Shown: positions 1 through 33,590 of the stretch, one piece after another
How positions within the stretch are numbered: position 1 is the stretch's first letter
How the letters are laid out: each line of letters opens with the position of its first letter
IMG/VR virus record: IMGVR_UViG_3300009703_004110
Coordinates: 62,001-126,000 of that record
Strand: one strand, 5' to 3'
DNA: 64,000 nucleotides
Program-made: the position numbers and the translations under genes
Notes under the pieces: model-generated
What the model was told of the DNA's origin: nothing
The model's database searches: none
The model's input: only the letters and a program-made list of their open reading frames with translations

Positions 1-265
1 TAATAACCACCATATCAAGGCTATCTAATATTTTCTTTTTTTGCTCAAAAGTATAAACCAGATGGTCATTAGTTCCGCGTATCCAGACATTAGTCTTTCT
101 TCCATAATCGCGTCTAAATTTTTTATTTAACGAAAAATCATTAAATCTTATTATTAGATCATGACTATCTATTTTGTGCCCATGACGTTGACCAATTTCG
201 CACGGGCTATTTCCCACGATACAATAATCTTTACGTTTTGAGAATAATTTCTCTATATTTGACAT
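1..265 (-). CDS. GT29 (eukaryote-type sialyltransferase-like) glycosyltransferase, 3'-truncated by window edge; absent from ORF track
   Basis: Manual translation of the minus strand from ATG at 265 (in-frame ATGs also at 307/313): MSNIEKLFSKRKDYCIVGNSPCEIGQRHGHKIDSHDLIIRFNDFSLNKKFRRDYGRKTNVWIRG..., open to base 1. This matches sialylmotif L (CxxVGNS...G..ID.HD.(V/I)IR.N...DVG.KT). Confidence 0.8.
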   Translation of the reverse strand, partial: MSNIEKLFSKRKDYCIVGNSPCEIGQRHGHKIDSHDLIIRFNDFSLNKKFRRDYGRKTNVWIRGTNDHLVYTFEQKKKILDSLDMVVI

Positions 266-322
266 CCGCGGCCCCCACAAGTATTTTGTACTGCAGACTA
301 TAATCATGCTCATTTCAAATAC

Positions 323-898
323 TTAATTTTTTGGGACGGCCTCTATTCTAAGCTCTCCCTTTTTTGTAGTCTCTATCCGAACGATATTGAAATATTCAGT
401 GATAGCTCTAGTCCACCAATCTAAGTCTTTTACTGTGATATGAGAATTTCTACCATTCGGAAGAATCTTCCTAGAAAGCCTGGTGGATATTGTAAAGTAT
501 GCTGCCATATTAGTTAGATAAGCAATATACTCTAAAGTCGTTTTAACTTTGTCCTCTTCGATATGCTCCATTACATCCATACAAACTACAAGATCTGCTC
601 TGGATGGAAGACTTGAAAATGATTTAATACACGGATCAAAGTTGGATATCTTTAAATTCAATGGCTCATCTAAAATAAAGTCAGCTATTTCAAAGGCAAT
701 AGAGAGGGTCGCCTTTCCGCATCCATAATCTAATAGGCTTTCTACATTATATCTGTCTATAATATCATGAACTGCTTTGAAATGCTTATAAGAGTGCCTG
801 CCGTACGCCAGCCGGTTTATATGAAGGTCTTTATTTAACTGTCGTAACTCATCTGATACTAAAATACCAAGTTCTAGTTTCTGGCCATTTATTATCAC
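323..898 (-). CDS. Class I SAM-dependent methyltransferase
   Basis: LLDYGCGKATL motif I and ADLVVCMDVMEHIEE; GTG start overlapping the gmd stop, with GGAG SD. Confidence 0.8.
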   Translation of the reverse strand: MIINGQKLELGILVSDELRQLNKDLHINRLAYGRHSYKHFKAVHDIIDRYNVESLLDYGCGKATLSIAFEIADFILDEPLNLKISNFDPCIKSFSSLPSRADLVVCMDVMEHIEEDKVKTTLEYIAYLTNMAAYFTISTRLSRKILPNGRNSHITVKDLDWWTRAITEYFNIVRIETTKKGELRIEAVPKN

Positions 899-1884
899 TC
901 TATCTCCGCAAGATCATTTTCATACATCTCTTTTAATAAGTCTTCACAACTATATGAAGGCTCCCAGCCAAGAACTTTCCTCGCCTTTGTCGCGTCACCC
1001 TTTAGAAAGTTAACCTCTGATGGCCTCATAAATCTTTCATCAACCCTGTAAACATCTTCGACCTTTAATCCGGCCAGATCCTCGCAGACGTACTTGAACA
1101 TTTCCCCAATGGACAGTGGGTTTCCTGTGGCAATTACATAATCATCCGGGACTTCTTGCTGTAACATCATCCATTGGGCCTCAACATAGTCCTTTGCGTG
1201 CCCTTCGTCACGGAAGGCTTCAAGGTTGCCCATTCTAACATGCTCCGCTAGACCACTTTTAACTGCCGCAATACCTTTGGTAATTTTTCTTGTTGCAAAG
1301 TCATGACCACGTCTTGGAGAGCTATGATTAAATAAGATGCCATTTGATGCATGTAATCCATACGCTTCTCTATAGTTAACTACAGCATAAAATGCCGCAG
1401 CCTTTGCTATGGCATATGGTGAACGAGGATGGAATCGGCTGTCTTCATTCAATCCCGCCTCTGGACAGTTAATACCACCAAATAACTCAGAGGTGCTAGC
1501 TTGATAGAACTTTGTGTGCGGTGACAACTGCTTAATCAAATCAAGCTGCATAATTACTGCCTCACCATCAACTCGGAAGGTTGTGATAGGCTCTTTGAAT
1601 GATTGACCAACGTGAGACATTGCGGCCAGATTGTAATATTCATCAGGCTGCCATTCGATCAGCAGCTTTCCAATAAAAGATGAATCTGTTATATCGGAAT
1701 AAAGCAGCTTAAAATTTTCATGCTTCAATATCTTCTCTAGATTCTCTAGTCCATTGTTAACAGACTTTCGCCTGGTTATTCCTATAACCGTGTATCCCTT
1801 CTTTAATAAAAATTCCGATAGGTATGAGCCATCCTGCCCTGCGCATCCGGTCACAATAGCCGTAAGGCTTTTACTTCTTTCCAT
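895..1884 (-). CDS. gmd: GDP-mannose 4,6-dehydratase
   Basis: TAIVTGCAGQDGSYL, YNLAAMSHV, FYQASTSELFG, SPYAIAK, NGILFNHSSPRRG..FATRKIT, MGNL.A.RD.GHAKDYV. Start revised to the ATG at 1884 (MERSKS). Confidence 0.95.
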   Translation of the reverse strand: MERSKSLTAIVTGCAGQDGSYLSEFLLKKGYTVIGITRRKSVNNGLENLEKILKHENFKLLYSDITDSSFIGKLLIEWQPDEYYNLAAMSHVGQSFKEPITTFRVDGEAVIMQLDLIKQLSPHTKFYQASTSELFGGINCPEAGLNEDSRFHPRSPYAIAKAAAFYAVVNYREAYGLHASNGILFNHSSPRRGHDFATRKITKGIAAVKSGLAEHVRMGNLEAFRDEGHAKDYVEAQWMMLQQEVPDDYVIATGNPLSIGEMFKYVCEDLAGLKVEDVYRVDERFMRPSEVNFLKGDATKARKVLGWEPSYSCEDLLKEMYENDLAEIE

Positions 1885-2602
1885 TAATAATCTCCAATAA
1901 TAACTTTTTCCAAATCTCTCTATTAAAATTTGTTTTAGCATGGCAACTTCTACATAAAGTAATTAAATTAAGAACATTGTTATTAAACTTATCATAATCT
2001 ATATGATGTACATCATATCCATTGTTTTTACATATTGCACAAGAAAAATTATCTCTTTTTCGAACTGAAGTTCTTAAGTTATCGTTCCACTCTTTTGGTC
2101 TTTCTAAAAATGAAACTCCACCTTTCCAAGAGCCGTTTTTATCTCCCGAAACTTTATCACCATTTTGATACATTGGATTGTTTGAGCCAGAGACATCTGT
2201 ATGATTTTCAGATATAAGCTTTTTTGATTCAAAAGAATGAGATTTTCCATAAAAGCTATTTTTTGTCCCAGATTGAGCCTCTGATAATTTAGCTTTTATT
2301 AAAGAGGCCTTATATTCTCCATGTTTTTTTACATAAGATCCCTTGTTTGATTCTGATAAAATCTTTTTTGTTTCTTCCGAATGCTTTTTCCCATAAAACG
2401 GATTATTTTCTCCACTTACTTTTTTAGATAACGCCTCTTTAAATTCGTCCGTTCTTTTTCTTCCAGTATTTGTAAATTTTGAAGCACAGCTTCTGCTGCA
2501 AAAACGCCTAACTCTCAATCTTGCAGTATCTCGTACTTCAAAATTTAATCCACATTCTTCACAGATTTTTACAATATATTTTTTTATAAGTCGATTACTC
2601 AT
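1871..2602 (-). mobile_element. Free-standing HNH homing endonuclease with N-terminal Zn ribbon and NUMOD3 repeats
   Basis: CEECG...FCSRSC; SGENNPFYGKKHSEETK and SGTKNSFYGKSHSFESK (NUMOD3); CAIC...DVHHIDYDKFNN...NLITLCRSCH. AAGGA SD before ATG 2602. Confidence 0.85.
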
Positions 2603-2667
2603 AATTATCCTTAATGACATTTATATCTGGTATCACTATATTAAGATATTACCAGTTATGATGACCA

Positions 2668-3693
2668 CTAAGTATTTTCTTTTATAGACATTTTCTTCTT
2701 TCTCTTCTCAATTTTTGATGCTTGAGAGCTTTTCCTGATTGCCTTAAATAATCTTTTGTGATTTTTTACCAAGAAATCAAATGCATGACCAGACTCTATT
2801 TCTGTAATTTCAAATTGGCAATAAGCAAGATGATACAATAAAGGCTCTCTATCTGGATAGATAGGATACTCTATATATCTATAGTCATGAACGGCTATAC
2901 CTTGCGCAGGGCTTATTTTTTCTGTAAATATAGGCACACCCTCGATGATCGCCTCTATTGAAGTCGCACTAGCCGGGGCTACACATGCCCAAGCACCCTT
3001 TAAATCAACTTGAATTGGTCTATCAATAGAGCTGCTTAGGACTTCCGCATTAGATATGCCCTTTACGGCTCTGTAGATTGGCCTTATATCCGTTCCTCCT
3101 GGCTTTGGTCTTACTCTGATTGGTCTATCAGTATTCGCTCTGATAATTTTCATAGTATTCTTTAGCCAGTTTGGCTTCATTCCCATTGCTCCAGAAAAAA
3201 ATCCAGTTGGAGGGCAGACTAGGACGTACTCACCTTCGGTTTTCCACGGCTTAAGCTTTATATTGAATTTCTCAAAGCGATCTGCCGGTCTTCTCTCTAT
3301 CTTGGTTGGATGAATCCCATTGGCTACTATTCTAAAGCTTGGAGGATTTCCAGAATGAACACCCTTCCATCTATAACCTCTATCAAAATATGCATGGTCT
3401 ACATAAAGTAAATCACCAGCACCATCTTGTAAGCATGGCTTAACAATCTTGTGAATAGTATCTTTACCAAAAGCTACAGATAGCCCTGGATATATCTGGT
3501 CTACATCTTGAGACGCATATAAATGCCCATACCCTCTGGATGTATCAACTAGTTTAAGCATGACATATCGCGGGAATAATTTATGCCTATCCATATAAAA
3601 GTTGATATTAAAACGAGACTCGTCCCTATCGCTAGTTTCTTTTGCTACTTTAGCGACCCTCTCTATCCAGCCCGGCTCTAATCTCCATTTCAT
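2668..3693 (-). CDS. KpsS/KpsC (Capsule_synth)-like GT-B glycosyltransferase, paralogue 1
   Basis: Shares with the other four paralogues: YV(D/E)xxYF, VLVCPP, RPIRVRPKP, SIEAIIEGVPIF, YPDREPLLYHLAYCQF. Confidence 0.55.
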   Translation of the reverse strand: MKWRLEPGWIERVAKVAKETSDRDESRFNINFYMDRHKLFPRYVMLKLVDTSRGYGHLYASQDVDQIYPGLSVAFGKDTIHKIVKPCLQDGAGDLLYVDHAYFDRGYRWKGVHSGNPPSFRIVANGIHPTKIERRPADRFEKFNIKLKPWKTEGEYVLVCPPTGFFSGAMGMKPNWLKNTMKIIRANTDRPIRVRPKPGGTDIRPIYRAVKGISNAEVLSSSIDRPIQVDLKGAWACVAPASATSIEAIIEGVPIFTEKISPAQGIAVHDYRYIEYPIYPDREPLLYHLAYCQFEITEIESGHAFDFLVKNHKRLFKAIRKSSQASKIEKRKKKMSIKENT

Positions 3694-3694
3694 A

Positions 3695-4684
3695 TTATGC
3701 AGGACCCATTATAAAGTCTTTTCCGGCCCTCTCTAAAACTTTGTAACCGAAGGTTTTAATGATATACTTTTTTGTTTCATTATTTATTCTGCCCTCTAAC
3801 TCTAGTTCAACTATCATGATTGGCTGGCATCTTTTGATTGTCTCTGTAGCACCTTTAATAACTGCATCTTCAAAACCTTGTACATCTATTTTGATAAGAT
3901 CTACATTTTTAAGCTTGAAGCTGTCAAGCGTTCTTACCGCTGTACCAGTTCCTTTGGTTGCGTATGTATTTCCACTATTTCCAGCTTCAATATTTAAAAA
4001 TACCTCGCCCTCTTCGCTTCCTAGGGCGATATTGTGACATATAAGGTCTGGGCAGTTTTTGATGAAGCATTCATAACTCTCGGCTGACGGCTCGAATGCC
4101 ACCACTCTTTCAAAATGCTCAGACATCGCCTTGGAGTAAAACCCAACATGTCCTCCAATATCTACGGACGTGTTTCTGCCCGATAAATATTTTAGAACCT
4201 TTACGTAGGTATGGTATTGATATCTATCCGTATCTCTTGGAAAATGGTCGTCATCTTTTGGAAGTGCCATCTCACTTGGCCTGCGCTTACTTGCTATCAT
4301 AAAGACTCTTTCGCTATTATTTAGAAAGGTATCTATTCTCCAGCGATGCTGAAAGTGTCGCGCAAAGACGCGCTCATTTTTTAAAAACCTGCTGCTTGGC
4401 ACCTTGGAGTCTATAAGAATAGTATCAGCAACCTTTGGAAGATTTTCGATGATCTTTCTTATATCCACATCCCTGTTTCTTTCTAAGAATTTAGAAACAA
4501 TAACTAGGTCAAAAGAGTGAGCGTCCAGACTTAGAGCCTCAGATGGTGACACGAACCTAACAGAAGCTGTCGGGAAAAATTTACGTAGATGCATCATAAG
4601 ATCACCAGTTTTATTTCCATAAACTCCGATTGTCTCAAACCCGTAACCACGTAAAGAGCGTTTAATTTGTTTCAAATTATGCAT
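3695..4684 (-). CDS. FkbM-family methyltransferase with an extra N-terminal Rossmann-like domain
   Basis: SVDIGGHVGFYS...VVAFEP...IALG...LDSFKL.NVDLIKIDVQGFE..VIKGA; N-domain contains SFDLVIVSKFLE. Confidence 0.8.
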   Translation of the reverse strand: MHNLKQIKRSLRGYGFETIGVYGNKTGDLMMHLRKFFPTASVRFVSPSEALSLDAHSFDLVIVSKFLERNRDVDIRKIIENLPKVADTILIDSKVPSSRFLKNERVFARHFQHRWRIDTFLNNSERVFMIASKRRPSEMALPKDDDHFPRDTDRYQYHTYVKVLKYLSGRNTSVDIGGHVGFYSKAMSEHFERVVAFEPSAESYECFIKNCPDLICHNIALGSEEGEVFLNIEAGNSGNTYATKGTGTAVRTLDSFKLKNVDLIKIDVQGFEDAVIKGATETIKRCQPIMIVELELEGRINNETKKYIIKTFGYKVLERAGKDFIMGPA

Positions 4685-5540
4685 CTAATATTCTCCAAAT
4701 CTTTGGTGACTTCATTTCATGAACAGTAAATTGTCCATAGGATAAGTGTCTCATCCACATTTCCCTATTTGGATAAACAGGGTCATTTATTTTTGACAGA
4801 CGCTTTAAGCCCATTGGCCTAGAAGCATTAGGCCCAAGTGTAAATACCGGAATGCCGTGCATTACCGCCTCAATGCCGGCTACGCTATTATATGTTACCA
4901 TAGCAAAAACATCATTGTCAAAATCATCCTGGATTATGTTTTCAGTCAGTCTAAGGGTTCTAACTCTAGGTTTCAACCTTACTCTGATCTCTTTATCAGT
5001 ATTTTTCTTGAGCCTTTTGACGATTTTTTTTGTCCATACTTCAGCATCAATATTAAAATAGTGAGCGGACTTTAAGGATGGGGGACAGATTAAAATTGTT
5101 CCGCCTTTCTTCTTCCACGGAAGAAGAATCTTATTCCAGTCAACGCCTTGGTGCTTATATATAGTCTTTTGTGCCAGTTTATATCTATCATTGGGACGTG
5201 GTATAATCTTGTCAAATTGCACATCATTTTTAACAATTCTATGGAATAGCTTTCCTGTAGTAAGAATCGGCTTACCCTTTGGATCTGTATAATACTTACT
5301 AAGATTCCCAAAGTAACCGGTCTCTACATAATAATAGTCGATACCGTATTCCAAAGCTAAATGCATAACTCTTCTGTCACGAAGCCCTCTAACTAAAATC
5401 TTAGAGCCTCTATATTTTTCAATATTATTCATGAAGTCTTTTTTGACCATGATTTCTGCATCACAAGACTTGGCAAACTCACTAAGAATGCTGTCTCCTG
5501 GCCTAAAATAAAACGATCTATTCTTCATATCATTTTTCAT
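4677..5540 (-). CDS. KpsS/KpsC-like glycosyltransferase, paralogue 2
   Basis: YYYVETGYF, ILICPPS, IRVRLKP, TYNSVAGIEAVMHGIPVF, YPNREMWMRHLSYGQFT. Confidence 0.6.
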   Translation of the reverse strand: MKNDMKNRSFYFRPGDSILSEFAKSCDAEIMVKKDFMNNIEKYRGSKILVRGLRDRRVMHLALEYGIDYYYVETGYFGNLSKYYTDPKGKPILTTGKLFHRIVKNDVQFDKIIPRPNDRYKLAQKTIYKHQGVDWNKILLPWKKKGGTILICPPSLKSAHYFNIDAEVWTKKIVKRLKKNTDKEIRVRLKPRVRTLRLTENIIQDDFDNDVFAMVTYNSVAGIEAVMHGIPVFTLGPNASRPMGLKRLSKINDPVYPNREMWMRHLSYGQFTVHEMKSPKIWRILDA

Positions 5541-11374: not shown

Positions 11375-12167
11375 AGCCAAACTCACGCAGTCTGAGCCAT
11401 TCATCACCGTACTTCCAGTCTATTCCTCGTTTTGGTTCCCATATATCAAACCAAGGACCACCATTAGTGAAGTGAACGTTCTTAGCTTCTAAGCTTTCGG
11501 GAGAATGGCCTGGTAACCAATTCCACTCCTCTGGCAATTCACCTATATCTTTATCCTCTAGCCACTTCAGATTATGTAACCAAGTTCCTGGCTTAGTGCT
11601 AACATCAGCCGCTGTTAAATTGTGATGAGCCTGATGGCCGCAATTCCAGAGCATAACACTGGACCAGTTTTTTCTACTATAAAATGTTTGTGGGCATCCG
11701 TAGAGCTTGACAGCAACTTTGCCACCATCCTCAAACTGATGCTTAACACACTGTAAAGCTGGCGCGTCTGCAGTAGCGTAGCGATCAAATATCTCACACG
11801 GGTCGCTGCGAAAATACATATCGTTATCCATAAACAAAGCAAACCCTTCGTGCTGGTTTAAAAAAGGAACTAAAAATCTTGAAAAACTGAACTCTGTCGA
11901 ATACGGCTTACCATCGAACCTGTCTACCATATGGTCTACTTTATTTTGCCCCCATACAGTGGATTCTACATGCGGAACCCTAAAATATAATCCACTTCTT
12001 CTTAAGCTTGTCTGATTTAAGGTCACAATATTAAGCGGCCTAGAGGCGTGTCTTAGGATTGAGTCTGTTAAAACTTCAGAGGCATGATGATCTCTTGGGT
12101 CATAACCGATGTATATTGTATCTAGCTTTCTAACTTCTTTATCATTCTGATTAATGACTTTTCTCAT
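11364..12167 (-). CDS. GT8-like glycosyltransferase
   Basis: IYIGYDPRD, STEFSFSRFLVP, ALFMDNDMYF, RKNWSSVMLWNCGH, WNWL, HFTNGGPW. Confidence 0.75.
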   Translation of the reverse strand: MRKVINQNDKEVRKLDTIYIGYDPRDHHASEVLTDSILRHASRPLNIVTLNQTSLRRSGLYFRVPHVESTVWGQNKVDHMVDRFDGKPYSTEFSFSRFLVPFLNQHEGFALFMDNDMYFRSDPCEIFDRYATADAPALQCVKHQFEDGGKVAVKLYGCPQTFYSRKNWSSVMLWNCGHQAHHNLTAADVSTKPGTWLHNLKWLEDKDIGELPEEWNWLPGHSPESLEAKNVHFTNGGPWFDIWEPKRGIDWKYGDEWLRLREFGYGE

Positions 12168-12954
12168 CAGCAATTCTCCTTACTATAGACTCTATAATTT
12201 CGAGTGTTTGCGCGGGATCACGAGTTTTATATGCAAAGCCCGTAGGTTTAATAGCGTCATATAAAGCAGCATCATTACCAAATTCTTCGCATCTATCACC
12301 TACGAACCATATTTTTTCATAGTCATCGAAATGCTTTAGAACATATGTTTTATCCCAGCCTGACGGATAAATATCAAACGAGGTATTTCCACCTAGTACC
12401 GCCGTTACTCTGCTATCTATCCTTTTAAGCCTTCTATTTAACCTTCCCAAAAAACGAACTCTAAGGCCGGTCTCTTGATCTAATTCTCTAAACTGTTCTC
12501 GTTGATCTGTATTAGCATTTCTACCGATCGGGCACCAATTTATCATTGAGCCTCTAAGCTCTAAAAAATTACCCGTTAAGGGGATTAAAAGCCCTTTCTC
12601 TTTGACAAGACATTTTTGTAAGTCAAAAATAATGGCCATTATTCCGGCCATTACTTCAGCACCTAAATGCTCTTCCATATTATTGAAATAAATCTCTTCA
12701 TAGTCGTCGATCTTATCTTTATGCTTATAAACCTTTGTGCCATTACATGGTAAAATTATAATTCTATTTAAAAGCATATCTTCAAATACTTGCGGCATTT
12801 GCTCTTGCAAGTAATTATAATCGCTTCCTGAAACTACTCCCACTTCTGCGACCCAAAGCAACTCCATTAATGCTTTAGCTATTTCATCTCCCATTTGGCC
12901 GCGCGCAGGTGTTAATGTGCCGTCCATGTCGAACAGCACCAGATGATCGGACAT
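12151..12954 (-). CDS. Phosphomannomutase, eukaryote-type HAD family (PMM2/Sec53-like)
   Basis: LFDMDGTLTPAR, VSGSD, ELRGSMINWCPIGRNA, GGNTSFDIYP.GWDKTY.L, FVGD....GND..LY. GGAG SD before ATG 12954. Confidence 0.9.
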   Translation of the reverse strand: MSDHLVLFDMDGTLTPARGQMGDEIAKALMELLWVAEVGVVSGSDYNYLQEQMPQVFEDMLLNRIIILPCNGTKVYKHKDKIDDYEEIYFNNMEEHLGAEVMAGIMAIIFDLQKCLVKEKGLLIPLTGNFLELRGSMINWCPIGRNANTDQREQFRELDQETGLRVRFLGRLNRRLKRIDSRVTAVLGGNTSFDIYPSGWDKTYVLKHFDDYEKIWFVGDRCEEFGNDAALYDAIKPTGFAYKTRDPAQTLEIIESIVRRIADEKSH

Positions 12955-12955
12955 C

Positions 12956-13426
12956 TTAACTCCTAGATTTAGCAACCAGTTCACTACTGCTCTGAACCTT
13001 TCCACCGCCAACATTCCACAACATGTAGATGCCAAGTTCATTACAGACCTTTACTTCTGGTACGTTATCAGATTTTCTGTCGCCACCATTGGCAAAGAAA
13101 TCTGGACATAGTCTTCTTAGTGCTTCACAAACTGAACCATCCGAGTCATCCACATGGCTCACATGCACTACGCCTCTTATCGCAGATAATATTTCTGCTC
13201 TCTCCTCAAAAGACATAAATACATAACCTTTCTTTCTCATTAGCCACTCATCACTGTTGGCCACAACAATAACTTCCTTGCCACCCTTAGCGGCATCTAA
13301 AATCATTTGAACGTGGCCAACGTGTATTGGGTCAAATCCACCGGAAACAACTACCGAACTCTGTTCGTACCCGTCATAAGTCTTTTTGGTTTCCCAACTT
13401 CCATCATCATTTAACGGCATCATCAT
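12956..13426 (-). CDS. HxGH-family cytidylyl/adenylyltransferase (TagD / RfaE domain II-like)
   Basis: VVVSGGFDPIHVGH, VVANSDEWL.RKKG, FANGGDR, GGGKVQSSS. Confidence 0.8.
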   Translation of the reverse strand: MMMPLNDDGSWETKKTYDGYEQSSVVVSGGFDPIHVGHVQMILDAAKGGKEVIVVANSDEWLMRKKGYVFMSFEERAEILSAIRGVVHVSHVDDSDGSVCEALRRLCPDFFANGGDRKSDNVPEVKVCNELGIYMLWNVGGGKVQSSSELVAKSRS

Positions 13427-14000
13427 CTCCTCTGGCTACTTGCCCTAAGTATCCACCATGATGTCTCTTAGCGTACTCCTCTTTCGTAAATTTTTTCTTT
13501 TCCATCACGACCATAGCTAGTACGTCGCCAATAACTAACATCACTGTTGTTGAGCATGTTGGGGCCATGCCTAGTGGGCATACCTCCGGGTATCCTCCGG
13601 TTTCAATCACTACATCAGATTGTACTGCCAGCGGCGCATCTTTATTAGCAGTGACTGTGATTAGCTTTAAATCACACAGTTGCTTTGCCAAATAAGTAGA
13701 CTCAATAATCTCTCGTGTCTTGCCAGAGTTAGAAAAAGCAATCATTAGATCGCCCTCTGCTACCATTCCAAGATCACCATGTTGAGCTTCGCACGGATGA
13801 AGATAAAAGGCAGGCGTCCCTGTTGACGCGAAAGTAGCGGACACTTTTCTAGCTATTAGCCCCGCCTTCCCCATTCCTATAAAGACAAGCTTGCCTTTAC
13901 ACTTTAGTATCTCCTCTACTGCTTCATCAATTCCGGTCAAAGGAATGGCTTTAATTGCATTAACCTCTTCCTTCAGCACCTCTTTAGCTGTTCTTCGCAT
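13407..14000 (-). CDS. kdsD: Arabinose-5-phosphate isomerase, SIS domain only (no CBS pair)
   Basis: FIGMGKAGLIARKVSATFASTGTPAFYLHPCEAQHGDLG; SNSGKT.E; APT.STT; HHGGYLG; ends at 197 aa. Confidence 0.85.
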   Translation of the reverse strand: MRRTAKEVLKEEVNAIKAIPLTGIDEAVEEILKCKGKLVFIGMGKAGLIARKVSATFASTGTPAFYLHPCEAQHGDLGMVAEGDLMIAFSNSGKTREIIESTYLAKQLCDLKLITVTANKDAPLAVQSDVVIETGGYPEVCPLGMAPTCSTTVMLVIGDVLAMVVMEKKKFTKEEYAKRHHGGYLGQVARGDDDAVK

Positions 14001-14748
14001 CTATCATACCTCGCATTATTGCTCTTGCTTTATCTAAGTCTTTCTGTGTGTCAACTGAAAATTTCTCAGAATCATTACAGTTGGTTGTTCTTATAGTAAT
14101 CTTATTAAATAGCCAAGTAAGCTGCTCTAATTTTTCAGTTTCTTCTAGATATGACATTGGTAAATTTTTAATGATATCTAAAGTAGGACGTGTAAAGCCA
14201 TATGTGCCTACATGTTGGGCATACGGATTATATAGTACCCGATCTCGGCAATGCGGTATTGGACTTCTGCTAAAATATATTGCATCATTATTCTTATCTA
14301 GAACTACTTTAGCTATAGTATCATCGTTTATAGCGTTTTCTGATAGCTCTGTTACAAGAGTAGTGACGGCTATTTCTTTTGGGTCTAAAGATCGCAAGAA
14401 GTCTACTGAATCTTGTACAATTTTTAATGATATTAGAGGCTGGTCTCCTTGGATGTTCAAAAAGTAATCATATCCTGGGTATAATTCCGCCACTTCTGCG
14501 ACCCGTAAAGTGCCGGATATATGATCATGACTTGTCATTACTACAGTTCCACCAAATCCCTCTACTGCTTTAAAAATTCTGATATCATCGGTTGCAACCA
14601 TAGTCGTTGGCAGAATTTTAATTACTCGCTCATAAACCCATTGTATCATAGGCCTGCCACAAATATCCGCCAGAGGCTTCCCTGGCAGCCTGCTAGAATC
14701 ATATCTAGCAGGAATTACTCCAAGCACATTTGCTGACATATTACTCAT
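13984..14748 (-). CDS. kdsB: CMP-Kdo synthetase (3-deoxy-manno-octulosonate cytidylyltransferase)
   Basis: IPARYDSSRLPGKPLADI.G.PMIQWV, SGT.RVAEV, NIQGDQP, YFSRSPIP, H.G.Y, E.LEQL.WL, SVDT..DL. Confidence 0.92.
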   Translation of the reverse strand: MSNMSANVLGVIPARYDSSRLPGKPLADICGRPMIQWVYERVIKILPTTMVATDDIRIFKAVEGFGGTVVMTSHDHISGTLRVAEVAELYPGYDYFLNIQGDQPLISLKIVQDSVDFLRSLDPKEIAVTTLVTELSENAINDDTIAKVVLDKNNDAIYFSRSPIPHCRDRVLYNPYAQHVGTYGFTRPTLDIIKNLPMSYLEETEKLEQLTWLFNKITIRTTNCNDSEKFSVDTQKDLDKARAIMRGMIDAKNS

Positions 14749-15706
14749 CTTCTTCACACATCCAAAATGGGTTCATTCTAAATAGCCCGGTCATTGCGTC
14801 TCTGACAGTTCCGTCCTTCGCAATACCTCTGGCATGGAAGCCCCTTGTGTTAACAATAACCAAAGAATTCCCATCAATAGCCTCTGCGGTTATGGAATTT
14901 CTATAGCCCATTGCCTTGATTTCTTTAGCAGAAGCTCTAAAAGACCCCTCTCTAGTTCCCTTGTTTGATGATTTATATGCATCAATAATTAATTTCTGAG
15001 ACCACGCCAATCTTCCTGGAATACTTCTATGAGATCCTTTAACGTATCTTGTTGGTCCTTGCTCTAAAGTCATTGGGGCTAAATAAAACCAAAATTTAAT
15101 AGTTGGATGGAAAGTATCTTCGTGTATTTGCTTTTGTATATCATTATCTCTATGAACTAAGCGCTCTACTCGCTTGTCATGGAATACGAAGTCGTCTCGT
15201 CCATTGGCCATTCTAACTAGATCAATTAACTCTGGATTATTAAAGAAGCTGAAAAGCTCTTCGTGATGTTTATTTAATCGCAAATATGAGTGCTTCCAGT
15301 TATCAAATCTATCCCTTGGTTGCTCCGCTATTAATCTATAAAATTTCTTTCTAATTCTCTTAAGCTCTTTGCCTTTAATAAAGTCAGGAATTATAACCAT
15401 CCCATCTTCATAAAAGGACCTGATGTAATCATTATGTAGATTGTATGTCATCTCTCGATCATATATAGCTTCCGCCAGGACTACTCTGAAAATATAGAGC
15501 CCCTTTCTATTAAGCTCTTCATCTTTTAAAACTGGAAAGCGTCGAAATTTTTTCTCCTTACTGAAAATCACACTTCTCTCCGCTTCCGGCAGTGAATATA
15601 TAATATCTAGTATTCCAGAGAAATCTTTTTCTCCAAATACTGAGCAAACCTCCTCTTCGTCATATTCATATTCACTAAGAACTCTTTCTATATATTCTCT
15701 CCTCAT
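14741..15706 (-). CDS. Fe(II)/2-oxoglutarate dioxygenase, PhyH-like
   Basis: IHEDTF (HxD), FWFYL, GPTRYVKGSH, distal NTRGFHARG. Confidence 0.75.
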   Translation of the reverse strand: MRREYIERVLSEYEYDEEEVCSVFGEKDFSGILDIIYSLPEAERSVIFSKEKKFRRFPVLKDEELNRKGLYIFRVVLAEAIYDREMTYNLHNDYIRSFYEDGMVIIPDFIKGKELKRIRKKFYRLIAEQPRDRFDNWKHSYLRLNKHHEELFSFFNNPELIDLVRMANGRDDFVFHDKRVERLVHRDNDIQKQIHEDTFHPTIKFWFYLAPMTLEQGPTRYVKGSHRSIPGRLAWSQKLIIDAYKSSNKGTREGSFRASAKEIKAMGYRNSITAEAIDGNSLVIVNTRGFHARGIAKDGTVRDAMTGLFRMNPFWMCEEDE

Positions 15707-15712
15707 AAAACC

Positions 15713-16501
15713 TCACAAAATTTCTATATTTTTATTACATTCAGACAGCCACCACGCCACTTCTGTAAAGGTGCTCATATACGTACCTAATATAGTCTTG
15801 CCCTTTGCCAATAAGTATAGGTCAATAATGTCATCTTCAATAGTTCTATCTTCTGAGTTGGAGTAGACTATTATTCTATCTCCAAAAACTTCTTCTAGTC
15901 GCCTTATATGACTTAATGAATCTGAGGCCACAAAGAATGTAACGCTCGAATCAAACTGCTTCATTCTTGAAATAAATTTATTGATATCAAAGTTTTTTCT
16001 TCTTGAGCTTCCGGCTATATCATACCACGTTCTCATATGTACTGAGATGGTCTCTTTATCAAAGCGCCGCTTATAGAATTTGATTATCTTTCTTTGATAT
16101 CTTCTTTTTAATTTTATTTGTTTAAAAATATCAATATAGACATCTTGAACTGATTTCGGTATCCTGTTGTATTCTAGATCAATATTTCTTCCGCTCTTAT
16201 TTCCTTTTTTATCTGAGAACTTTGAAAATCCGACTGGCAAATCATCATCATCCATAATAGCCAGCCTCCATGAGTCATAAAATTTAGATCTCTTCGGAAA
16301 CGGCTCTGTAACCTCAATGTCATTTTCAAAAAAGTCTGAAAATCTACTTTCTGGCCTATGAGGTGTTCTGCCGTTCTTGTCAATATAGATATTGATGATT
16401 GGTCTCCAAAAAATACCATGACTTTTCGGCTCCAATCTCATACATGAAGCTAGGGCCTTTAATCTGTTCGCAATACCTGCATCTTCTGACGCTATTATCA
16501 T
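15713..16501 (-). CDS. NodZ/GT23/O-fucosyltransferase-like glycosyltransferase
   Basis: GIANRL, SVHMRT, FFVASDS, IDLYLLAK...GTYMSTF. Start revised to ATG 16501. Confidence 0.65.
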   Translation of the reverse strand: MIIASEDAGIANRLKALASCMRLEPKSHGIFWRPIINIYIDKNGRTPHRPESRFSDFFENDIEVTEPFPKRSKFYDSWRLAIMDDDDLPVGFSKFSDKKGNKSGRNIDLEYNRIPKSVQDVYIDIFKQIKLKRRYQRKIIKFYKRRFDKETISVHMRTWYDIAGSSRRKNFDINKFISRMKQFDSSVTFFVASDSLSHIRRLEEVFGDRIIVYSNSEDRTIEDDIIDLYLLAKGKTILGTYMSTFTEVAWWLSECNKNIEIL

Positions 16502-16502
16502 T

Positions 16503-21428: not shown

Positions 21429-22136
21429 TTAAATCCATTTAAAAACATAGTCAAACTCTACGTTTCCAACACATGTTGCGCCCAAATTCTCCAGAAATTT
21501 TCCAGAAGCAAAAGGCTCTTGCTTTATTTTACGCGCCCTTAACTTTTCTTCTGGCAATTGTTCTATCACAATTACTGGCTTACTTATTTTAATAGTTTTT
21601 ATTGCTCCATGTAATACGTCAAGCTCATATCCATCTACATCGATTTTTATATAATCAACATTTCTAAGCTTAAAATGATCTAGTGGCAGAATCGGCATTC
21701 TTCCCTCTAAAATATCTCCACTGTACTTGATTGTTTTGGTAATAGAGTTACCTTGCATTGAGCCTATAAAACCATAATGTGCGCCTAAGCCACATGGATA
21801 TATTGTCACATTCGAAGTATCTACATTTTTTGCCAATAATGGCAGCCACTTCCATCTTGGTTCAAATGCAAAGACATGATCAAATTCTTGTCCAAGGTGT
21901 CTGCACCACTCTCCAAATCTGGCTCCAATGTCCAGCGCTATTCCTCTGCCTTCACAATGATCCAGACTAAGCTGCCTTTGCTTTATTTGACCGGGACCCC
22001 TACAGACGTCTGCCTTAATATTCGTCTTTTTAAGATAGGCCGATTGCTTGTAAAGATCTTGCTTGGTGATGATCTGATCTCTCATATAAGTATAAGATCC
22101 GAGATCTTCTATCGTATAGGGATTCACATTAAACAT
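21429..22136 (-). CDS. FkbM-family methyltransferase
   Basis: ALDIGARFGEW, VFAFEP, LDHFKL.NVDYIKIDVDGYE..VLHGA. Confidence 0.8.
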   Translation of the reverse strand: MFNVNPYTIEDLGSYTYMRDQIITKQDLYKQSAYLKKTNIKADVCRGPGQIKQRQLSLDHCEGRGIALDIGARFGEWCRHLGQEFDHVFAFEPRWKWLPLLAKNVDTSNVTIYPCGLGAHYGFIGSMQGNSITKTIKYSGDILEGRMPILPLDHFKLRNVDYIKIDVDGYELDVLHGAIKTIKISKPVIVIEQLPEEKLRARKIKQEPFASGKFLENLGATCVGNVEFDYVFKWI

Positions 22137-22909
22137 TATTGTAATTGACCTCTTATCTTGAGAGCTTGTACCAAGATACCTTCTAGTCTATCAAGCTGCA
22201 ATTGTGTTGCTGAATCACTGCCTGCTGAAGCCGGATCTGGATGTGTTTCGATAAACAATCCATCAACTCCAACTGCTACTGCCGCATTAACCATTGTGCC
22301 TATCATAGTCGGATCACCACCAGTTACGCCATGCGTCTGATTAGGCATCTGAAGGCAATGAGTGCAATCCATAATTACTGGAGCAAACTTTTGCATCCTT
22401 GGGATAGAAGTAAAGTCTACGATTAAATTGCTATACCCAAATGTCGTTCCTCGTTCAGTCAAGAAGACTTGTTCATTTCCAGTAGAACGTACCTTTTCTG
22501 CTGCAAATCCCATCATTTCTGGAGAGACAAATTGACCCTTCTTTACGTTGACCGGAAGGCCCGTCTCTCCTGCCGCAATTAACAGGGCGGTCTGCCTACA
22601 TAGAAAGGCCGGGATTTGAAGGTGGGTCACGTACGGAGCTACTAGGGCTGCTTCATGACTCTCGTGTATGTCTGTGATTACAGGCACATCATATGTATCA
22701 CGAATTTCTTTCAAAATGCCCAGCGCCTCTTGTTGATCGATTCCCGTAAATGAAGTTAGTCGCGTACGATTCGCCTTCGCCCATGATGCCTTAAAGATAT
22801 AATCTATCCCAAGCCTATCCGTCATCTCCTTAACTGCCTCAACAACTTGAAACGGTGTTTTTCTGTTTTCAATTGCGCAAGGTCCGGCCATCAATATTAA
22901 CTTCTTCAT
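22136..22909 (-). CDS. kdsA: Kdo-8-phosphate synthase
   Basis: AGPCAIE, FKASWAKANRT, TDIHE, QIPAFLCRQT, VNVKKGQF, ERGTTFGY, DCTH, FIETHPDP..A.SD. Confidence 0.95.
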   Translation of the reverse strand: MKKLILMAGPCAIENRKTPFQVVEAVKEMTDRLGIDYIFKASWAKANRTRLTSFTGIDQQEALGILKEIRDTYDVPVITDIHESHEAALVAPYVTHLQIPAFLCRQTALLIAAGETGLPVNVKKGQFVSPEMMGFAAEKVRSTGNEQVFLTERGTTFGYSNLIVDFTSIPRMQKFAPVIMDCTHCLQMPNQTHGVTGGDPTMIGTMVNAAVAVGVDGLFIETHPDPASAGSDSATQLQLDRLEGILVQALKIRGQLQ

Positions 22910-23574
22910 TTGTCTCTCCTGGCAAGTAATGCCTCAATTATTATTAGGTCATCTGGCACATCAACTTGAAAGCTTTCGGATGGGTACATTTCATAAACCC
23001 CTACTTTTCCAGATACGCGAACTTTATTTTTAAGCAATAGCTCTTTGGATGTAATATAGAATGCGCCATTTTCTTGGCAGCTTAAAGAAACTATTACATC
23101 TTGTCGTCTCGGCCTGTTATCTAGGGTCCATCCGTCCGGAGCCCATCCGTCCTCACTTATTTCCCATTGCGCAGGCCAATGCATTTTTGTGCCAGAGAAT
23201 ATAGAGTCTAACTTTGCATCTTTTAAAACTCTGAGTCCTTCGTTAATATCTTTTGAACGTAAAAGCGGAGATGTAGGTTGTATAAAAACTAGCTTATCAA
23301 AATCTATATTCTCTGCAAAATGAAGTAATGCACTTTCTGATGTAGACGTATCTTTTGCTAATTTTGGTGGCCTCATCAATACCATGGCCCCCCATGCTTC
23401 TGCCACCATAGCTATCTCTTCATCATCAGTACTTACCCAAGTTTCATCTACGTTTGACATAATTGCCGCTTCAATAGTGTAAGCTAACATGGGCTTGCCT
23501 CTAAGCTTCATTATATTTTTTCCAGGGATGCCTTTGCTCCCTCCTCTTGCCAAAATTACTGCTACAGTTTTCAT
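22906..23574 (-). CDS. neuA: CMP-N-acylneuraminate (nonulosonate) cytidylyltransferase
   Basis: ILARGGSKGIPGKNI, VSTDD, RP..LA.D, QPTSPL, RPRRQD, ENGAFY, VD.PDD. Confidence 0.9.
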   Translation of the reverse strand: MKTVAVILARGGSKGIPGKNIMKLRGKPMLAYTIEAAIMSNVDETWVSTDDEEIAMVAEAWGAMVLMRPPKLAKDTSTSESALLHFAENIDFDKLVFIQPTSPLLRSKDINEGLRVLKDAKLDSIFSGTKMHWPAQWEISEDGWAPDGWTLDNRPRRQDVIVSLSCQENGAFYITSKELLLKNKVRVSGKVGVYEMYPSESFQVDVPDDLIIIEALLARRDK

Positions 23575-24428
23575 ACACCACCTCTAAATTTAATTCGTTG
23601 CTCTATCTCTACGTCTAAGATTTCTTTATCTTTATATCTCAAGGCCTGCTCCATTCCTTTGACGTCGCGAACCAACTTTCGTAGGCCATCAGGCTCTAGA
23701 GATGCCGCATGATCTGTACCTTTCCACGTTCTATCCATAGTAAAGTGCCTTTCTATATATTCCGCTCCGAGAGCAACAGCCCCCATATCCATTGCGATTC
23801 CAAGATGATGACCAGAGAACCCAACGCCCTTTACTGTCTTACCCCAAATGTCTTTTAGCCTCTTAATTTCTAGCAGGCATAAGTCGCCATGAGATACTGG
23901 GTATCCAGAGGTGCAACTGTAAATAACCAAATCCTTGGCCCTGTCTTCATCTACAAATAATTTTAGCAGGGTCTTCTCTTCCGCCTTTGTTGTCATTCCA
24001 AGAGACAAATGAATCTCTCCTTCGTAATTTTCAATAAGCCAGCTTATCATGTCATACTTATTATTCATTGGCGATGGAATTTTAATCTTTTTAGGCTTTA
24101 GTGAGGCAATCTCCTGCGCAGAGGTCATATCCCATACTGAACAAGAATATTCAATATTGTGCTTCTCGCAGTAGGCCAGAAGCTCCTTATGGTCTTCAAG
24201 GCTTAGCTCTAAGAAATCTCTATGTGCGCCGTATGACGGACCATACGAATTCCACGGAGAAGGGTGTGGAGCGTGATATTCTTCATCTGTAAGCAGCTCC
24301 TTGACTGTTCTCTTTTGAAGCTTAACTACGTTTACTCCGGCATAATATTTTGCTTGATAAATAAGCTTCTTGGCTATTTCAAGTTGACCTTTATGGTTAC
24401 AACCTATTTCTGCTATAACTTGAACCAT
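23571..24428 (-). CDS. neuB: NeuB-family nonulosonate synthase lacking the C-terminal antifreeze/SAF domain
   Basis: IAEIGCNHKG, VKLQKR, KIPS, SLGMT, CTSGYP, GFSGHH, IERHFT.DR...GTDH.ASLEP; 285 aa. Confidence 0.9.
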   Translation of the reverse strand: MVQVIAEIGCNHKGQLEIAKKLIYQAKYYAGVNVVKLQKRTVKELLTDEEYHAPHPSPWNSYGPSYGAHRDFLELSLEDHKELLAYCEKHNIEYSCSVWDMTSAQEIASLKPKKIKIPSPMNNKYDMISWLIENYEGEIHLSLGMTTKAEEKTLLKLFVDEDRAKDLVIYSCTSGYPVSHGDLCLLEIKRLKDIWGKTVKGVGFSGHHLGIAMDMGAVALGAEYIERHFTMDRTWKGTDHAASLEPDGLRKLVRDVKGMEQALRYKDKEILDVEIEQRIKFRGGV

Positions 24429-24751
24429 TAGTCCTCCATTTTCTCAATACGCTTAAGAAGATCGTCTTCTCGTCCATCTGTCCAATGAAATCCACGATCG
24501 TCTACAAATAGATGTACAGATATCTTGTTTAAAACAAGGCCATGATATTTCGCTCCTGCTTCTTCCAACACTTCAGTCGTGTACTTAAAGTGCTTAAAAT
24601 GTCTCGCAGAGAAGAAGTAAATCTCATGCCCCTCGTCATAAAGCTTATTAACTAGCTCAATCATATGAGGCTTTGGAAAGGAATCTCTATAGTCATTGGC
24701 AGGATTACCTTGGGTAAATACAGTGTCATCTAAATCAAATGCTATCTTCAT
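24428..24751 (-). CDS. Small HAD-superfamily phosphatase
   Basis: FDLDDTV (DxDxT), FSAR, K, VDD motifs in 107 aa. Confidence 0.75.
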   Translation of the reverse strand: MKIAFDLDDTVFTQGNPANDYRDSFPKPHMIELVNKLYDEGHEIYFFSARHFKHFKYTTEVLEEAGAKYHGLVLNKISVHLFVDDRGFHWTDGREDDLLKRIEKMED

Positions 24752-33185: not shown

Positions 33186-33590
33186 TTATTCCCTGTGTAT
33201 TGTTTTATGGCAGTCTTGGCATAGGGTTATTCCGTTCCAAAGTTTAAGCGCCAGCTCAGGGTGCTTCGCTTTCTCTCGAATATGATGCGCTTCAATATTT
33301 TCTATTGCATCACATTCGATGCATTTATTATTGTCTCTTTTCTTAACGGCATTTGCCCATTTGTATAAGTCCCATCCGGACAGTTGAGCCTTTTCTCTAA
33401 ACTTCTTTTTAGATAGTCGAGATGGATACGGGTTACGCTTTTGATAGTCGATAGAACGCTGAATTTCTTTTTCGCGATTATTGTTATATACACAAGGGGA
33501 GGCAAAATTTACTAGGGAAGTGCGAACTGGCAGGGAAACGGTCCTTGAACAAATGTTCCTGTTGCTGTTGTTCCAGCTATGAAGAAGCAC
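33186..33590 (-). mobile_element. HNH endonuclease (134 aa), start overlapping the upstream structural gene
   Basis: W.NAVKKRDNNKCIEC...IEAHHI...P.LAL...NGITLC..CH..IH; GTG 33590 with GAGGA 6 nt upstream. Confidence 0.65.

What the first reader, a model, noticed from the sequence alone, without database searches (positions are those of the whole stretch)
1..265. Hidden eukaryote-type GT29 sialyltransferase-like gene at the left edge
Seen: an ORF missing from the track reads YCIVGNSPCEIGQRHGHKIDSHDLIIRFNDFSLNKKFRRDYGRKT. Known: this is the sialylmotif L pattern of GT29 (vertebrate ST3/ST6/ST8 enzymes, plant homologues proposed to use CMP-Kdo, poxvirus ST). Classical bacterial sialyltransferases belong to other families (GT38/42/52/80). 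Inference: this phage carries a GT29 together with its own CMP-nonulosonate and CMP-Kdo donor pathways, so it could sialylate or Kdo-ylate a target.
Basis: partly seen in the sequence, partly recalled or inferred. Interest (0 to 1): 0.85.

Follow-up and report, generated by a model that had tools for sequence, protein, structure and literature searches.

The report
Minimal GT29 sialyltransferase-like gene in jumbo phage
A marine jumbo phage carries a complete, very small (212 aa), soluble sialyltransferase-family (GT29) enzyme, whose nearest relatives are bacterial and phage rather than animal or plant, next to its own pathways for CMP-activated acidic sugars, so it probably adds a sialic-acid-like or Kdo sugar to a phage-made glycan.

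Summary
On the minus strand, window 1-265 encodes the first 88 codons of a gene that runs off the left edge. The quoted peptide is present exactly. The source contig (IMG/VR UViG_3300009703_004110, a contractile-tailed jumbo phage) shows the ORF continuing without a stop to 212 aa.

The protein passes the Pfam GT29 threshold. All four sialylmotifs (L, S, III, VS) align in register with pig ST3Gal-I. An AlphaFold model (pLDDT 94.6) matches only GT29 structures.

"Eukaryote-type" is not supported. The protein has no membrane anchor, no stem and no motif-S cysteine. Its closest relatives are about 30 clusters of 140-220 aa phage proteins, then bacterial GT29 proteins, which are already documented.

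The donor claim holds. KdsA and KdsB score above curated cut-offs, and a KdsD-like isomerase, a NeuB-like synthase, a second cytidylyltransferase and a small HAD phosphatase are also present. The same cassette, and the same order GMD-GT29-UGD-epimerase, recur in two other jumbo phages.

The most likely role is an inverting, cytoplasmic CMP-ulosonate transferase in a phage glycan pathway. Donor (nonulosonate or Kdo) and acceptor (virion protein or host envelope) are unresolved. It is a new member of a known family, of moderate interest.

The parts
1..265 (-). First 88 of 212 codons of the GT29-like gene (start ATG at 263-265). Contains sialylmotif L (CIVGNSP...RFNDF...DYGRKT). The remaining 124 codons, with motifs S, III and VS, lie beyond the left edge at L001:9130-9503.
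895..1941 (-). GDP-mannose 4,6-dehydratase. It is the gene upstream of GT29 in all related phages examined. In this phage a 191-aa methyltransferase (323-898) sits between them.
   Evidence: Pfam PF16363 7.2e-107; synteny
13407..14000 (-). SIS-domain arabinose-5-phosphate isomerase-like protein (KdsD/KpsF family, no CBS domains). First step of the Kdo route.
   Evidence: below the curated cut-offs
13984..14757 (-). KdsB, CMP-Kdo synthetase
   Evidence: NCBIfam NF003952 256.7 bits against a cut-off of 193
22136..22909 (-). KdsA, Kdo-8-phosphate synthase
   Evidence: NCBIfam NF003543 338.6 bits against a cut-off of 242
22906..23574 (-). Second CTP_transf_3 cytidylyltransferase (PseF-like, below cut-off). 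Putative CMP-nonulosonate synthetase.
23571..24428 (-). NeuB-family nonulosonate synthase, 285 aa, specificity unresolved. It is 58-59% identical to NeuB-like genes that sit directly upstream of GT29 genes in two bacterial MAGs.
24428..24751 (-). 107-aa HAD-like phosphatase, conserved directly upstream of the NeuB-like gene in three phages. Candidate Kdo-8-P and/or nonulosonate-9-P phosphatase.

Best explanation
The ORF is the 5' part of an intact gene for a minimal, cytoplasmic GT29-family glycosyltransferase of 212 aa.

Shown:
- It has the GT29 HMM signature, all four sialylmotifs and the GT29 GT-A-variant fold.
- The motif III histidine, the motif VS histidine and the motif VS glutamate are invariant in the 21-sequence phage alignment.
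- It belongs to a phage-specific clade nested among bacterial GT29 proteins.
- It sits in a glycan island of more than 30 kb, in which none of the 38 listed ORFs (window 323-32715) is a membrane protein. The island lies next to the baseplate/tail module of a jumbo myovirus.
- The gene order GMD-GT29-UGD-epimerase recurs in the relatives (here a methyltransferase sits between GMD and GT29). A HAD/NeuB-like/cytidylyltransferase/KdsA/KdsB/KdsD cassette lies upstream. Both features are conserved in at least three phage genomes.

Inferred from what is known of GT29:
- It is a metal-independent inverting transferase.
- It takes a CMP-beta-ulosonic acid made by the phage's own enzymes and puts it in alpha linkage on a sugar hydroxyl of a glycan built by the island's other glycosyltransferases (GT4, GT10-like, GT2). 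His197 would act as the catalytic base.

My preferences:
- Donor: a nonulosonate from the NeuB-like cassette, about 55%; Kdo, about 35%.
- Acceptor: a glycan assembled in the cytoplasm on a virion protein, somewhat favoured over a host envelope glycolipid or polysaccharide.
For: Identity:
- Pfam PF00777 at 42.4 bits against a cut-off of 23.
- Profile searches of PDB sequences return only GT29 chains at E of 1e-7 or better. With the broader profile, ST3Gal-I is hit at E=1.5e-13 with motifs L, S, III and VS in register.
- AF2 model with pLDDT 94.6 and pTM 0.91. The Foldseek top 30 are all GT29, probability 1.00, TM 0.5-0.62.

Selection:
- 21 homologues at 51-66% identity keep GNSP, RFNDF, PSxGL, GFSxCxEN, HYY and HxWxxE invariant.

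Phage clade:
- SH-aLRT 95 and 100.
- A sister sequence sits in a similar island.

Donor supply and conservation.

Link of GT29 to ulosonic acids in bacteria:
- NeuB-like genes lie within 6 kb in 5 of 24 loci, and kds genes in 2 of 24.
- One MAG has the operon GT2-NeuB-GT29-x-CTase-HAD.
- 16 of 95 relatives are fused to the PF05159 (GT107-type) domain.
- The E. coli K6 GT29-GT107 protein is tied to poly-Kdo (PMC13171606).

Cytoplasmic setting:
- No hydrophobic anchor in any phage GT29.
- No TM protein among the 38 island ORFs.
Against: - No bacterial or phage GT29 has been assayed, so donor, linkage and acceptor are all inferred.
- TM-scores to animal enzymes are only 0.5-0.6.
- Only one recognisable ulosonate transferase is present for two CMP-ulosonate pathways, so assigning the donor is ambiguous.
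- GT29's immediate neighbours make GDP- and UDP-sugars, not CMP-sugars. The CMP-sugar genes lie 13-24 kb away in this phage.
- No acceptor has been identified.
- The host is unknown.
Confidence: 0.72

Rival explanations
1. It is specifically a Kdo transferase: it uses the CMP-Kdo made by the phage's KdsD/KdsA/KdsB, not a nine-carbon sialic-acid-like sugar.
For: The phage's KdsA and KdsB score above curated cut-offs, and the kds cassette is conserved with GT29 in three phages. No GT30 Kdo transferase, and no convincing GT99 or GT107 one, is recognisable in the island, so something must consume the CMP-Kdo. Of 95 bacterial relatives, 16 are fused to the PF05159 Kdo-transferase domain. E. coli K6 GT29-GT107 is linked to poly-Kdo. 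Plant GT29-like RCKT1 is a putative CMP-Kdo transferase (PMC11288761).
Against: NeuB-like genes are the more frequent neighbour of bacterial GT29 (5 of 24 loci against 2 of 24). Two of those NeuB-like genes are 58-59% identical to the phage's. Every assayed GT29 uses CMP-sialic acids (established knowledge).
Confidence: 0.3
2. The island, GT29 included, remodels the host cell envelope (LPS or capsule) during infection rather than decorating the virion. The purpose would be, for example, to block superinfection or change recognition by grazers.
For: This is the usual reading of LPS and cell-wall genes in large marine myoviruses (PMC12801897). Bacterial GT29 relatives sit in capsule- or LPS-type loci. 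Kdo is an LPS and capsule sugar.
Against: The 38 island ORFs include no flippase, polymerase, ligase, ABC-transporter membrane component or polyprenyl-phosphate priming transferase, and none has a TM segment. The island abuts baseplate and fibre-sized structural genes.
Confidence: 0.35
3. It hypermodifies phage DNA, adding an ulosonic acid to a modified base.
For: Phage glycosyltransferases can put Kdo-like sugars on 5hmC (bioRxiv 10.1101/2023.12.21.572611).
Against: Those DNA glycosyltransferases are T4 beta-GT-like GT-B enzymes, not GT29. No cytosine methyltransferase/TET pair or dCMP hydroxymethylase was seen in the island. About ten glycosyltransferases plus O-methyltransferases point to a complex heteroglycan.
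Confidence: 0.04
4. It is a recent capture of a eukaryotic Golgi sialyltransferase.
For: The Pfam model and all solved structural matches are eukaryotic enzymes. The motif-L cysteine is retained.
Against: The profile scores bacterial proteins at 88-208 bits but animal enzymes at 20-29 bits. The nearest named relatives are Alphaproteobacteria, Micavibrio and Alkalihalobacillus. There is no TM or stem, and the motif-S cysteine is replaced by Leu. Bacterial GT29 are basal to eukaryotic ones in PMC5811610.
Confidence: 0.03

Closest known systems
Bacterial GT29 proteins (Petit et al. 2018, PMC5811610; NCBI 'glycosyltransferase family 29 protein'; E. coli K6 GT29-GT107 protein, PMC13171606)
   Same: Same Pfam family and sialylmotifs. 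Both lack the TM anchor and the L-S disulfide. They are the closest cellular relatives (25-37% identity, 88-208 bits). Both are associated with NeuB, cytidylyltransferase or Kdo genes.
   Different: Most bacterial relatives carry an N-terminal extension of more than 100 aa (116 of the 175 collected sequences, which include the 24 phage ones). Of the 95 closest relatives scanned, 16 carry a PF05159 domain and about 11 carry TPR repeats. The phage protein is the bare catalytic domain of about 212 aa and forms its own clade. None has been characterised biochemically.
Animal Golgi sialyltransferases (ST3Gal-I 2WML, ST6Gal-I 4JS1, ST8Sia-III 5BO6, ST6GalNAc-II 6APJ)
   Same: Same fold and four sialylmotifs in register, including the motif VS His and Glu.
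   Different: About 20% identity and TM 0.5-0.62. The animal enzymes are type II membrane glycoproteins of 300-400 aa with a stem, disulfides and large acceptor-binding inserts. The phage enzyme is cytosolic and 212 aa.
Plant GT29-like proteins (RCKT1 and other sialyltransferase-like proteins) proposed as CMP-Kdo/Dha transferases for RG-II (PMC11288761, PMC3522684)
   Same: GT29 members in organisms that make Kdo. This is a precedent for a non-sialic ulosonate donor.
   Different: They are Golgi membrane proteins, and their activity is likewise inferred rather than assayed. No direct sequence comparison was made here.
Viral GT29: poxvirus and herpesvirus sialyltransferases, giant-virus GT29 (ChoanoV1, Fadolivirus), and UniProt 'Glycosyl transferase family 29 [uncultured Caudovirales phage]' A0A6J5NLG3
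   Same: Foldseek probability 1.00 and TM 0.5-0.6. This shows GT29 has been captured by viruses repeatedly, phages included.
   Different: The pox and herpes enzymes are host-derived ST6Gal/ST3Gal-like proteins. The uncultured phage entry is 492 aa at 20% identity. None is linked to virus-encoded donor pathways in the literature searched.
GT42 (Campylobacter Cst-I/II) and Maf flagellin nonulosonate transferases
   Same: Related GT-A-variant fold and CMP-ulosonate donors.
   Different: No Pfam CST-I or MptE/Maf hit, and no GT42 or Maf chain among the sequence or fold matches.

Membership tests
CAZy GT29 / Pfam PF00777 | Scores above the curated gathering threshold of the family HMM | tested here: met
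   42.4 bits against 23 for the full length, and 37.4 bits for the in-window fragment. All 24 homologue clusters carry PF00777.
CAZy GT29 / Pfam PF00777 | Sialylmotif L (CMP-donor binding; C-x-V-G-N-S ... I-D ... R-x-N) | tested here: met
   CIVGNSP..IDSHDLIIRFNDF at residues 15-44. It aligns with ST8Sia-III and ST3Gal-I motif L. G18, N19, S20, P21, I32, D33, R40 and N42 are invariant.
CAZy GT29 / Pfam PF00777 | Sialylmotif S (P-S-T-G ... Y-G-F) | tested here: met
   PSTGL at 128 through YGFSF at 151, aligned to PSTGILS...LYGFG of ST3Gal-I.
CAZy GT29 / Pfam PF00777 | Motif III (H/Y-Y-x) and motif VS (H-x4-E, catalytic His) | tested here: met
   HYY at 170-172 and H197-x4-E202 are invariant in the phage family. 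H197 and E202 are at least 90% conserved across 100 phage and bacterial domains. They align to HYW and H..DFE of ST3Gal-I. The catalytic role is from established knowledge and was not tested.
CAZy GT29 / Pfam PF00777 | GT-A variant 2 fold of the solved sialyltransferases | tested here: met
   AF2 pLDDT 94.6. The Foldseek PDB top 30 are all GT29, probability 1.00, TMq 0.50-0.62.
CAZy GT29 / Pfam PF00777 | Transfers a CMP-activated ulosonic acid with inversion | not testable with these tools
   Needs an enzyme assay. Only the genomic association with CMP-Kdo and CMP-nonulosonate genes is shown.
Eukaryotic (Golgi) subtype of GT29 | Type II topology: N-terminal TM anchor plus stem, and the conserved motif L to motif S disulfide | tested here: not met
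   Motif L starts at residue 15. The maximum 19-residue hydropathy lies in the motif-S helix only. The motif-S Cys position is Leu.
Eukaryotic (Golgi) subtype of GT29 | Closest relatives are eukaryotic | tested here: not met
   Bacterial and phage relatives score 88-332 bits, animal enzymes 20-29 bits. The named nearest relatives are bacterial. No protist or plant sequences were in the tree.
CAZy GT42 (Cst-I/II, Lic3B) | Match to the CST-I family HMM or to solved Cst structures | tested here: not met
   No such Pfam hit at E of 0.01 or better. No GT42 chain in the PDB sequence or fold searches.

The most novel reading that the evidence does not exclude
A lineage of marine jumbo phages makes its own CMP-KDN-like or CMP-Kdo sugars. 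It uses a phage-specific, 212-aa minimal GT29 to cap glycans on its virion proteins in the bacterial cytoplasm. That would be a 'sialylated' phage particle, built with the smallest and only soluble, disulfide-free GT29 known. It would also be a living example of the prokaryotic stock from which eukaryotic sialyltransferases arose.
Probability: 0.25. Interest if true: 0.8.

Novelty: new member of a known kind. Interest (0 to 1): 0.55.

Why it matters
No prokaryotic or phage GT29 has been characterised. Their donors, linkages and acceptors are unknown, although they are proposed to be ancestral to all eukaryotic sialyltransferases.

This phage clade offers the barest form of the enzyme: 212 aa, soluble and with no disulfide. 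It sits beside its presumed donor pathways. That makes the function of bacterial-type GT29 directly testable.

It could also yield an easily expressed sialyl/Kdo-transferase scaffold for glycoengineering, since animal enzymes are hard to make in bacteria.

Biologically, it points to a conserved ulosonic-acid glycan module in a lineage of uncultured marine jumbo phages. Whether the target is the virion or the host surface is an open question in phage glycobiology.

Tried and rejected
1. Megablast of window 1-4000 against GenBank phages gave no match. tblastn of the protein gave one weak hit, an uncultured 484-kb phage at 27% identity.
2. NCBIfam has no model that hits the GT29.
3. I first read window 4677-5540 and its paralogue 2668-3693 as KpsC/KpsS-like (PF05159) Kdo transferases, which would mirror the bacterial GT29-GT107 fusions. 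This did not hold. The hit is 20.8 bits over 32 residues, in only 1 of 30 family members, and neither the single sequences nor a family profile hit KpsC or WbbB in PDB. I leave them as an abundant unknown family, possibly GT-B-like, that is conserved near GT29.
4. Single-protein scans of IMG/VR for the NeuB-like and KdsB genes were too insensitive to test co-occurrence. I replaced them with contig walks in two related phages.
5. I checked whether the TPR-fused bacterial relatives equate to the flagellin pseudaminyl transferase FlmG. The authors describe FlmG as GT-B, so there is no link.
6. The tree does not separate relatives with NeuB neighbours from those with Kdo neighbours, so phylogeny does not settle the donor.
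7. The window contains no tRNA genes that could hint at the host.
8. Literature searches for GT29/PF00777 in phages found no description.

Full report
**1. Observation**

- The feature lies on the minus strand. Reverse-complement translation of window 1-265 gives 88 sense codons, MSNIEK...DMVVI, and contains the quoted peptide exactly.
- The frame is open up to an ATG at 313 and is closed just above it.
- The ATG at 263-265 is the better start. It is preceded by a G-rich stretch. JGI and ENA gene calls use it. All homologues begin there.
- The ORF is missing from ORF lists only because it runs off the left edge.
- The in-window fragment alone hits Pfam Glyco_transf_29 at E=2.4e-9, 37.4 bits against a gathering score of 23. 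It is not a chance motif.

**2. The rest of the gene**

- An exact 40-mer located the source: IMGVR_UViG_3300009703_004110, 332 kb. The same genome is also assembled as 391-kb and 420-kb contigs.
- Window position 1 corresponds to L001 position 9504.
- The ORF continues 124 codons beyond the edge to a natural stop, at L001:9130-9768, 212 aa.
- The beyond-edge part contains PSTGL...YGFSF (motif S), HYY (motif III) and HDWRMEE (motif VS, H-x4-E).
- The full protein scores 42.4 bits on PF00777.

**3. Family membership**

- About 24 clusters of 208-221 aa proteins, 51-66% identical, all carry PF00777. They sit on contigs of up to 420 kb.
- In their alignment the four motifs are invariant, which indicates purifying selection on a working active site.
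- A profile of this family finds only GT29 chains in the PDB (ST8Sia-III, ST6Gal-I, ST3Gal-I, ST6GalNAc-II) and no GT42 chain.
- A broader profile of 100 phage and bacterial domains hits pig ST3Gal-I at E=1.5e-13 over profile positions 8-186. Motifs L, S, III and VS are all in register.
- AlphaFold2 with that alignment gives pLDDT 94.6 and pTM 0.91.
- The 30 best Foldseek PDB matches are all GT29, at probability 1.00 and TM 0.50-0.62.

**4. Not 'eukaryote-type'**

- A whole-library profile search finds 1869 representative proteins at E of 1e-3 or better, and 669 at 1e-10 or better.
- The closest ones that carry names are bacterial 'glycosyltransferase family 29 protein' entries from Micavibrio, Alkalihalobacillus and Thermodesulfobacteriota.
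- Species-representative genomes give 21 bacterial loci at 25-37% identity. They include Alphaproteobacteria MAGs, Micavibrio, Salinicola, Melainabacteria, Thermoguttaceae and Akkermansia.
- The phage profile scores these at 88-208 bits and animal enzymes at 20-29 bits.
- The phage proteins have no N-terminal anchor or stem, since motif L starts at residue 15. The motif-S cysteine of the eukaryotic disulfide is a leucine.
- This matches what Petit et al. reported for 23 bacterial GT29 sequences, which they place basal to the eukaryotic enzymes (PMC5811610).
- In a 196-row tree the 24 phage proteins plus one fragment form a clade (SH-aLRT 95). With six further proteins of 139-200 aa they form a clade at 100. 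One of those six lies in a similar phage-type sugar island.
- Most other relatives carry N-terminal extensions of more than 100 aa. Of 95 scanned, 16 have a PF05159 (KpsC/KpsS, GT107-type) domain and about 11 have TPR repeats.
- The phage enzyme is therefore the bare catalytic domain.

**5. Precedent**

- No paper in the library describes a phage GT29.
- Among 50,697 GenBank phage records only one uncultured 484-kb phage has a weak match.
- BFVD, however, contains an uncultured Caudovirales 'Glycosyl transferase family 29', a 222-aa unnamed viral protein, giant-virus GT29 proteins, and the pox and herpes sialyltransferases. All match the model at probability 1.00.
- The kind is therefore known. 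This clade is a new, uncharacterised member.

**6. Context**

- The window is phage. It has a baseplate wedge subunit (phrog_6, 5.6e-43), a gp25-like sheath initiator, and giant structural ORFs.
- Window 323-32715 plus the DNA left of the edge form one co-directional sugar island.
- The island encodes:
  - GMD, an Fcl-like enzyme, a eukaryotic-type PMM and a GT10-like fucosyltransferase;
  - UGD and a UXS-like epimerase;
  - two DegT aminotransferases (one a fragment), FkbM and other methyltransferases, and a PhyH-type oxygenase;
  - five or more GT4/GT1 glycosyltransferases and a GT2.
- The donor claim is upheld:
  - KdsA scores 338.6 bits against a cut-off of 242, and KdsB 256.7 against 193.
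  - A KdsD-like SIS protein, a NeuB-family synthase (equidistant from NeuB and PseI), a PseF-like cytidylyltransferase and a 107-aa HAD are also present.
- None of the 38 island ORFs has a TM-like segment that would mark a flippase, polymerase, transporter or priming enzyme.

**7. Conservation**

- In four related phage contigs the order GMD-GT29-UGD-epimerase is kept, with overlapping or abutting genes.
- Walking upstream in two of them (a 414-kb and a 224-kb contig, GT29 64% and 59% identical) reveals the same block. Its order is HAD(107 aa)-NeuB-cytidylyltransferase-KdsA-KdsB-SIS.
- The fucose, aminotransferase and GT10 genes seen in this window were not seen in the stretches examined in those two phages.
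- The conserved core is therefore both ulosonate pathways, GT29, several unknown proteins, and the GDP/UDP-sugar enzymes.

**8. What bacterial relatives say about the donor**

- Within 6 kb of 24 bacterial GT29 genes, NeuB-like genes occur in 5 loci, kds genes in 2, and a lone cytidylyltransferase in 2.
- In a Lentisphaeria MAG the operon is GT2-NeuB-GT29-x-cytidylyltransferase-HAD. In a Lachnospiraceae MAG it is NeuB-GT29.
- Those NeuB-like proteins are 58-59% identical to the phage's.
- A synthase paired with a phosphatase is what a 9-phosphate route such as KDN-9-P or Neu5Ac-9-P needs (my knowledge of the Bacteroides KDN pathway; not tested here).
- Pointing the other way are the GT107 fusions and the E. 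coli K6 GT29-GT107 protein linked to poly-Kdo.
- Plant GT29-like putative Kdo transferases also point the other way.
- The phage also has no other recognisable consumer of CMP-Kdo.
- I rate a nonulosonate donor at about 55% and Kdo at about 35%.

**9. Mechanism and role**

- By homology, the enzyme is a metal-independent, inverting CMP-ulosonate transferase, with His197 as the base and motifs L and S binding CMP (established for GT29; PMC9587256 lists GT29 as inverting).
- It works in the cytoplasm on a glycan built by the island's other transferases.
- The lack of export or lipid-carrier genes and the adjacency to tail genes tilt me towards virion-protein glycosylation. That would be analogous to mycobacteriophage and giant-virus self-glycosylation.
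- Host envelope remodelling is the usual reading of such islands in marine myoviruses and remains a strong rival. DNA glycosylation is unlikely.

**10. Verdict**

- It is a new member of a known family and of moderate interest. Its main value is as a tractable entry point to the unstudied prokaryotic GT29 enzymes and to phage ulosonic-acid glycobiology.

Noticed in passing
window 1871-2620, 26771-27634, 33186-33590, 38119-38853 (all minus strand): Four free-standing homing-endonuclease-like genes: HNH+NUMOD3, LAGLIDADG, HNH, LAGLIDADG. Three have much lower GC (0.27-0.29) than the window (0.385). One overlaps the 5' end of the GMD gene, whose start is called differently by JGI (348 aa) and ENA (329 aa).
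   Followed up: partly
window 16503-17162 (-) and neighbour 15713-16558 (-): A 219-aa ORF matches only about the first 106 positions of the 360-position DegT/DnrJ aminotransferase profile. The next ORF has no Pfam hit. This may be a split, truncated or interrupted aminotransferase gene. A full-length DegT lies at 20255-21418.
   Followed up: no
window 4677-5540 (-) and paralogue 2668-3693 (-): An abundant family of unknown function: at least 147 clusters in metagenomes, all 'hypothetical', with 21 invariant residues in a 30-sequence alignment. It is conserved near GT29 in related phages. It has only a borderline 32-residue PF05159 match and no PDB sequence match. It is a candidate for the second ulosonate transferase.
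   Followed up: partly
window 12151-13041 (-), 895-1941 (-), 19339-20253 (-), 18392-19339 (-): A eukaryotic-type phosphomannomutase (PF03332, 2.6e-37), GMD, an Fcl-like GDP-fucose synthase and a GT10-like fucosyltransferase. Together they look like a phage-encoded GDP-fucose route with its transferase. These fucose-route genes other than GMD were not seen in the stretches examined in two related phages.
   Followed up: partly
L001:8290-9126 (-) and L001:7923-8315 (-), just left of the window: The UDP-glucose/GDP-mannose dehydrogenase-family gene after GT29 is short (278 aa; only the N-terminal and central domains hit). In this phage it is followed by an overlapping 130-aa ORF with no Pfam hit. 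The short form is conserved in related phages.
   Followed up: no
window 38855-48502 (3215 aa), 54058-60228 (2056 aa), 33512-38062 (1516 aa), 60229-62580, 62590-63945 (all minus strand): Giant ORFs next to the baseplate genes have no PHROG hit at E of 1e-5 or better. The 2056-aa protein has six hydrophobic segments. They are candidate fibre or tape-measure-like proteins and possible glycosylation targets.
   Followed up: partly
L032:15536-17977 (+), related phage contig ERZ3422319 NODE_1600: An 813-aa product carries both GT4 (Glycos_transf_1) and Tubulin Pfam hits in the precomputed annotation. This is an odd combination for a jumbo phage.
   Followed up: no
L020:6104-9844 (+), Lachnospiraceae MAG: A 1246-aa bacterial protein combines two GT29 stretches, a GT4 domain, an MptE/Maf-like domain and a Nucleotid_trans domain, downstream of a NeuB-GT29 pair.
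   Followed up: no
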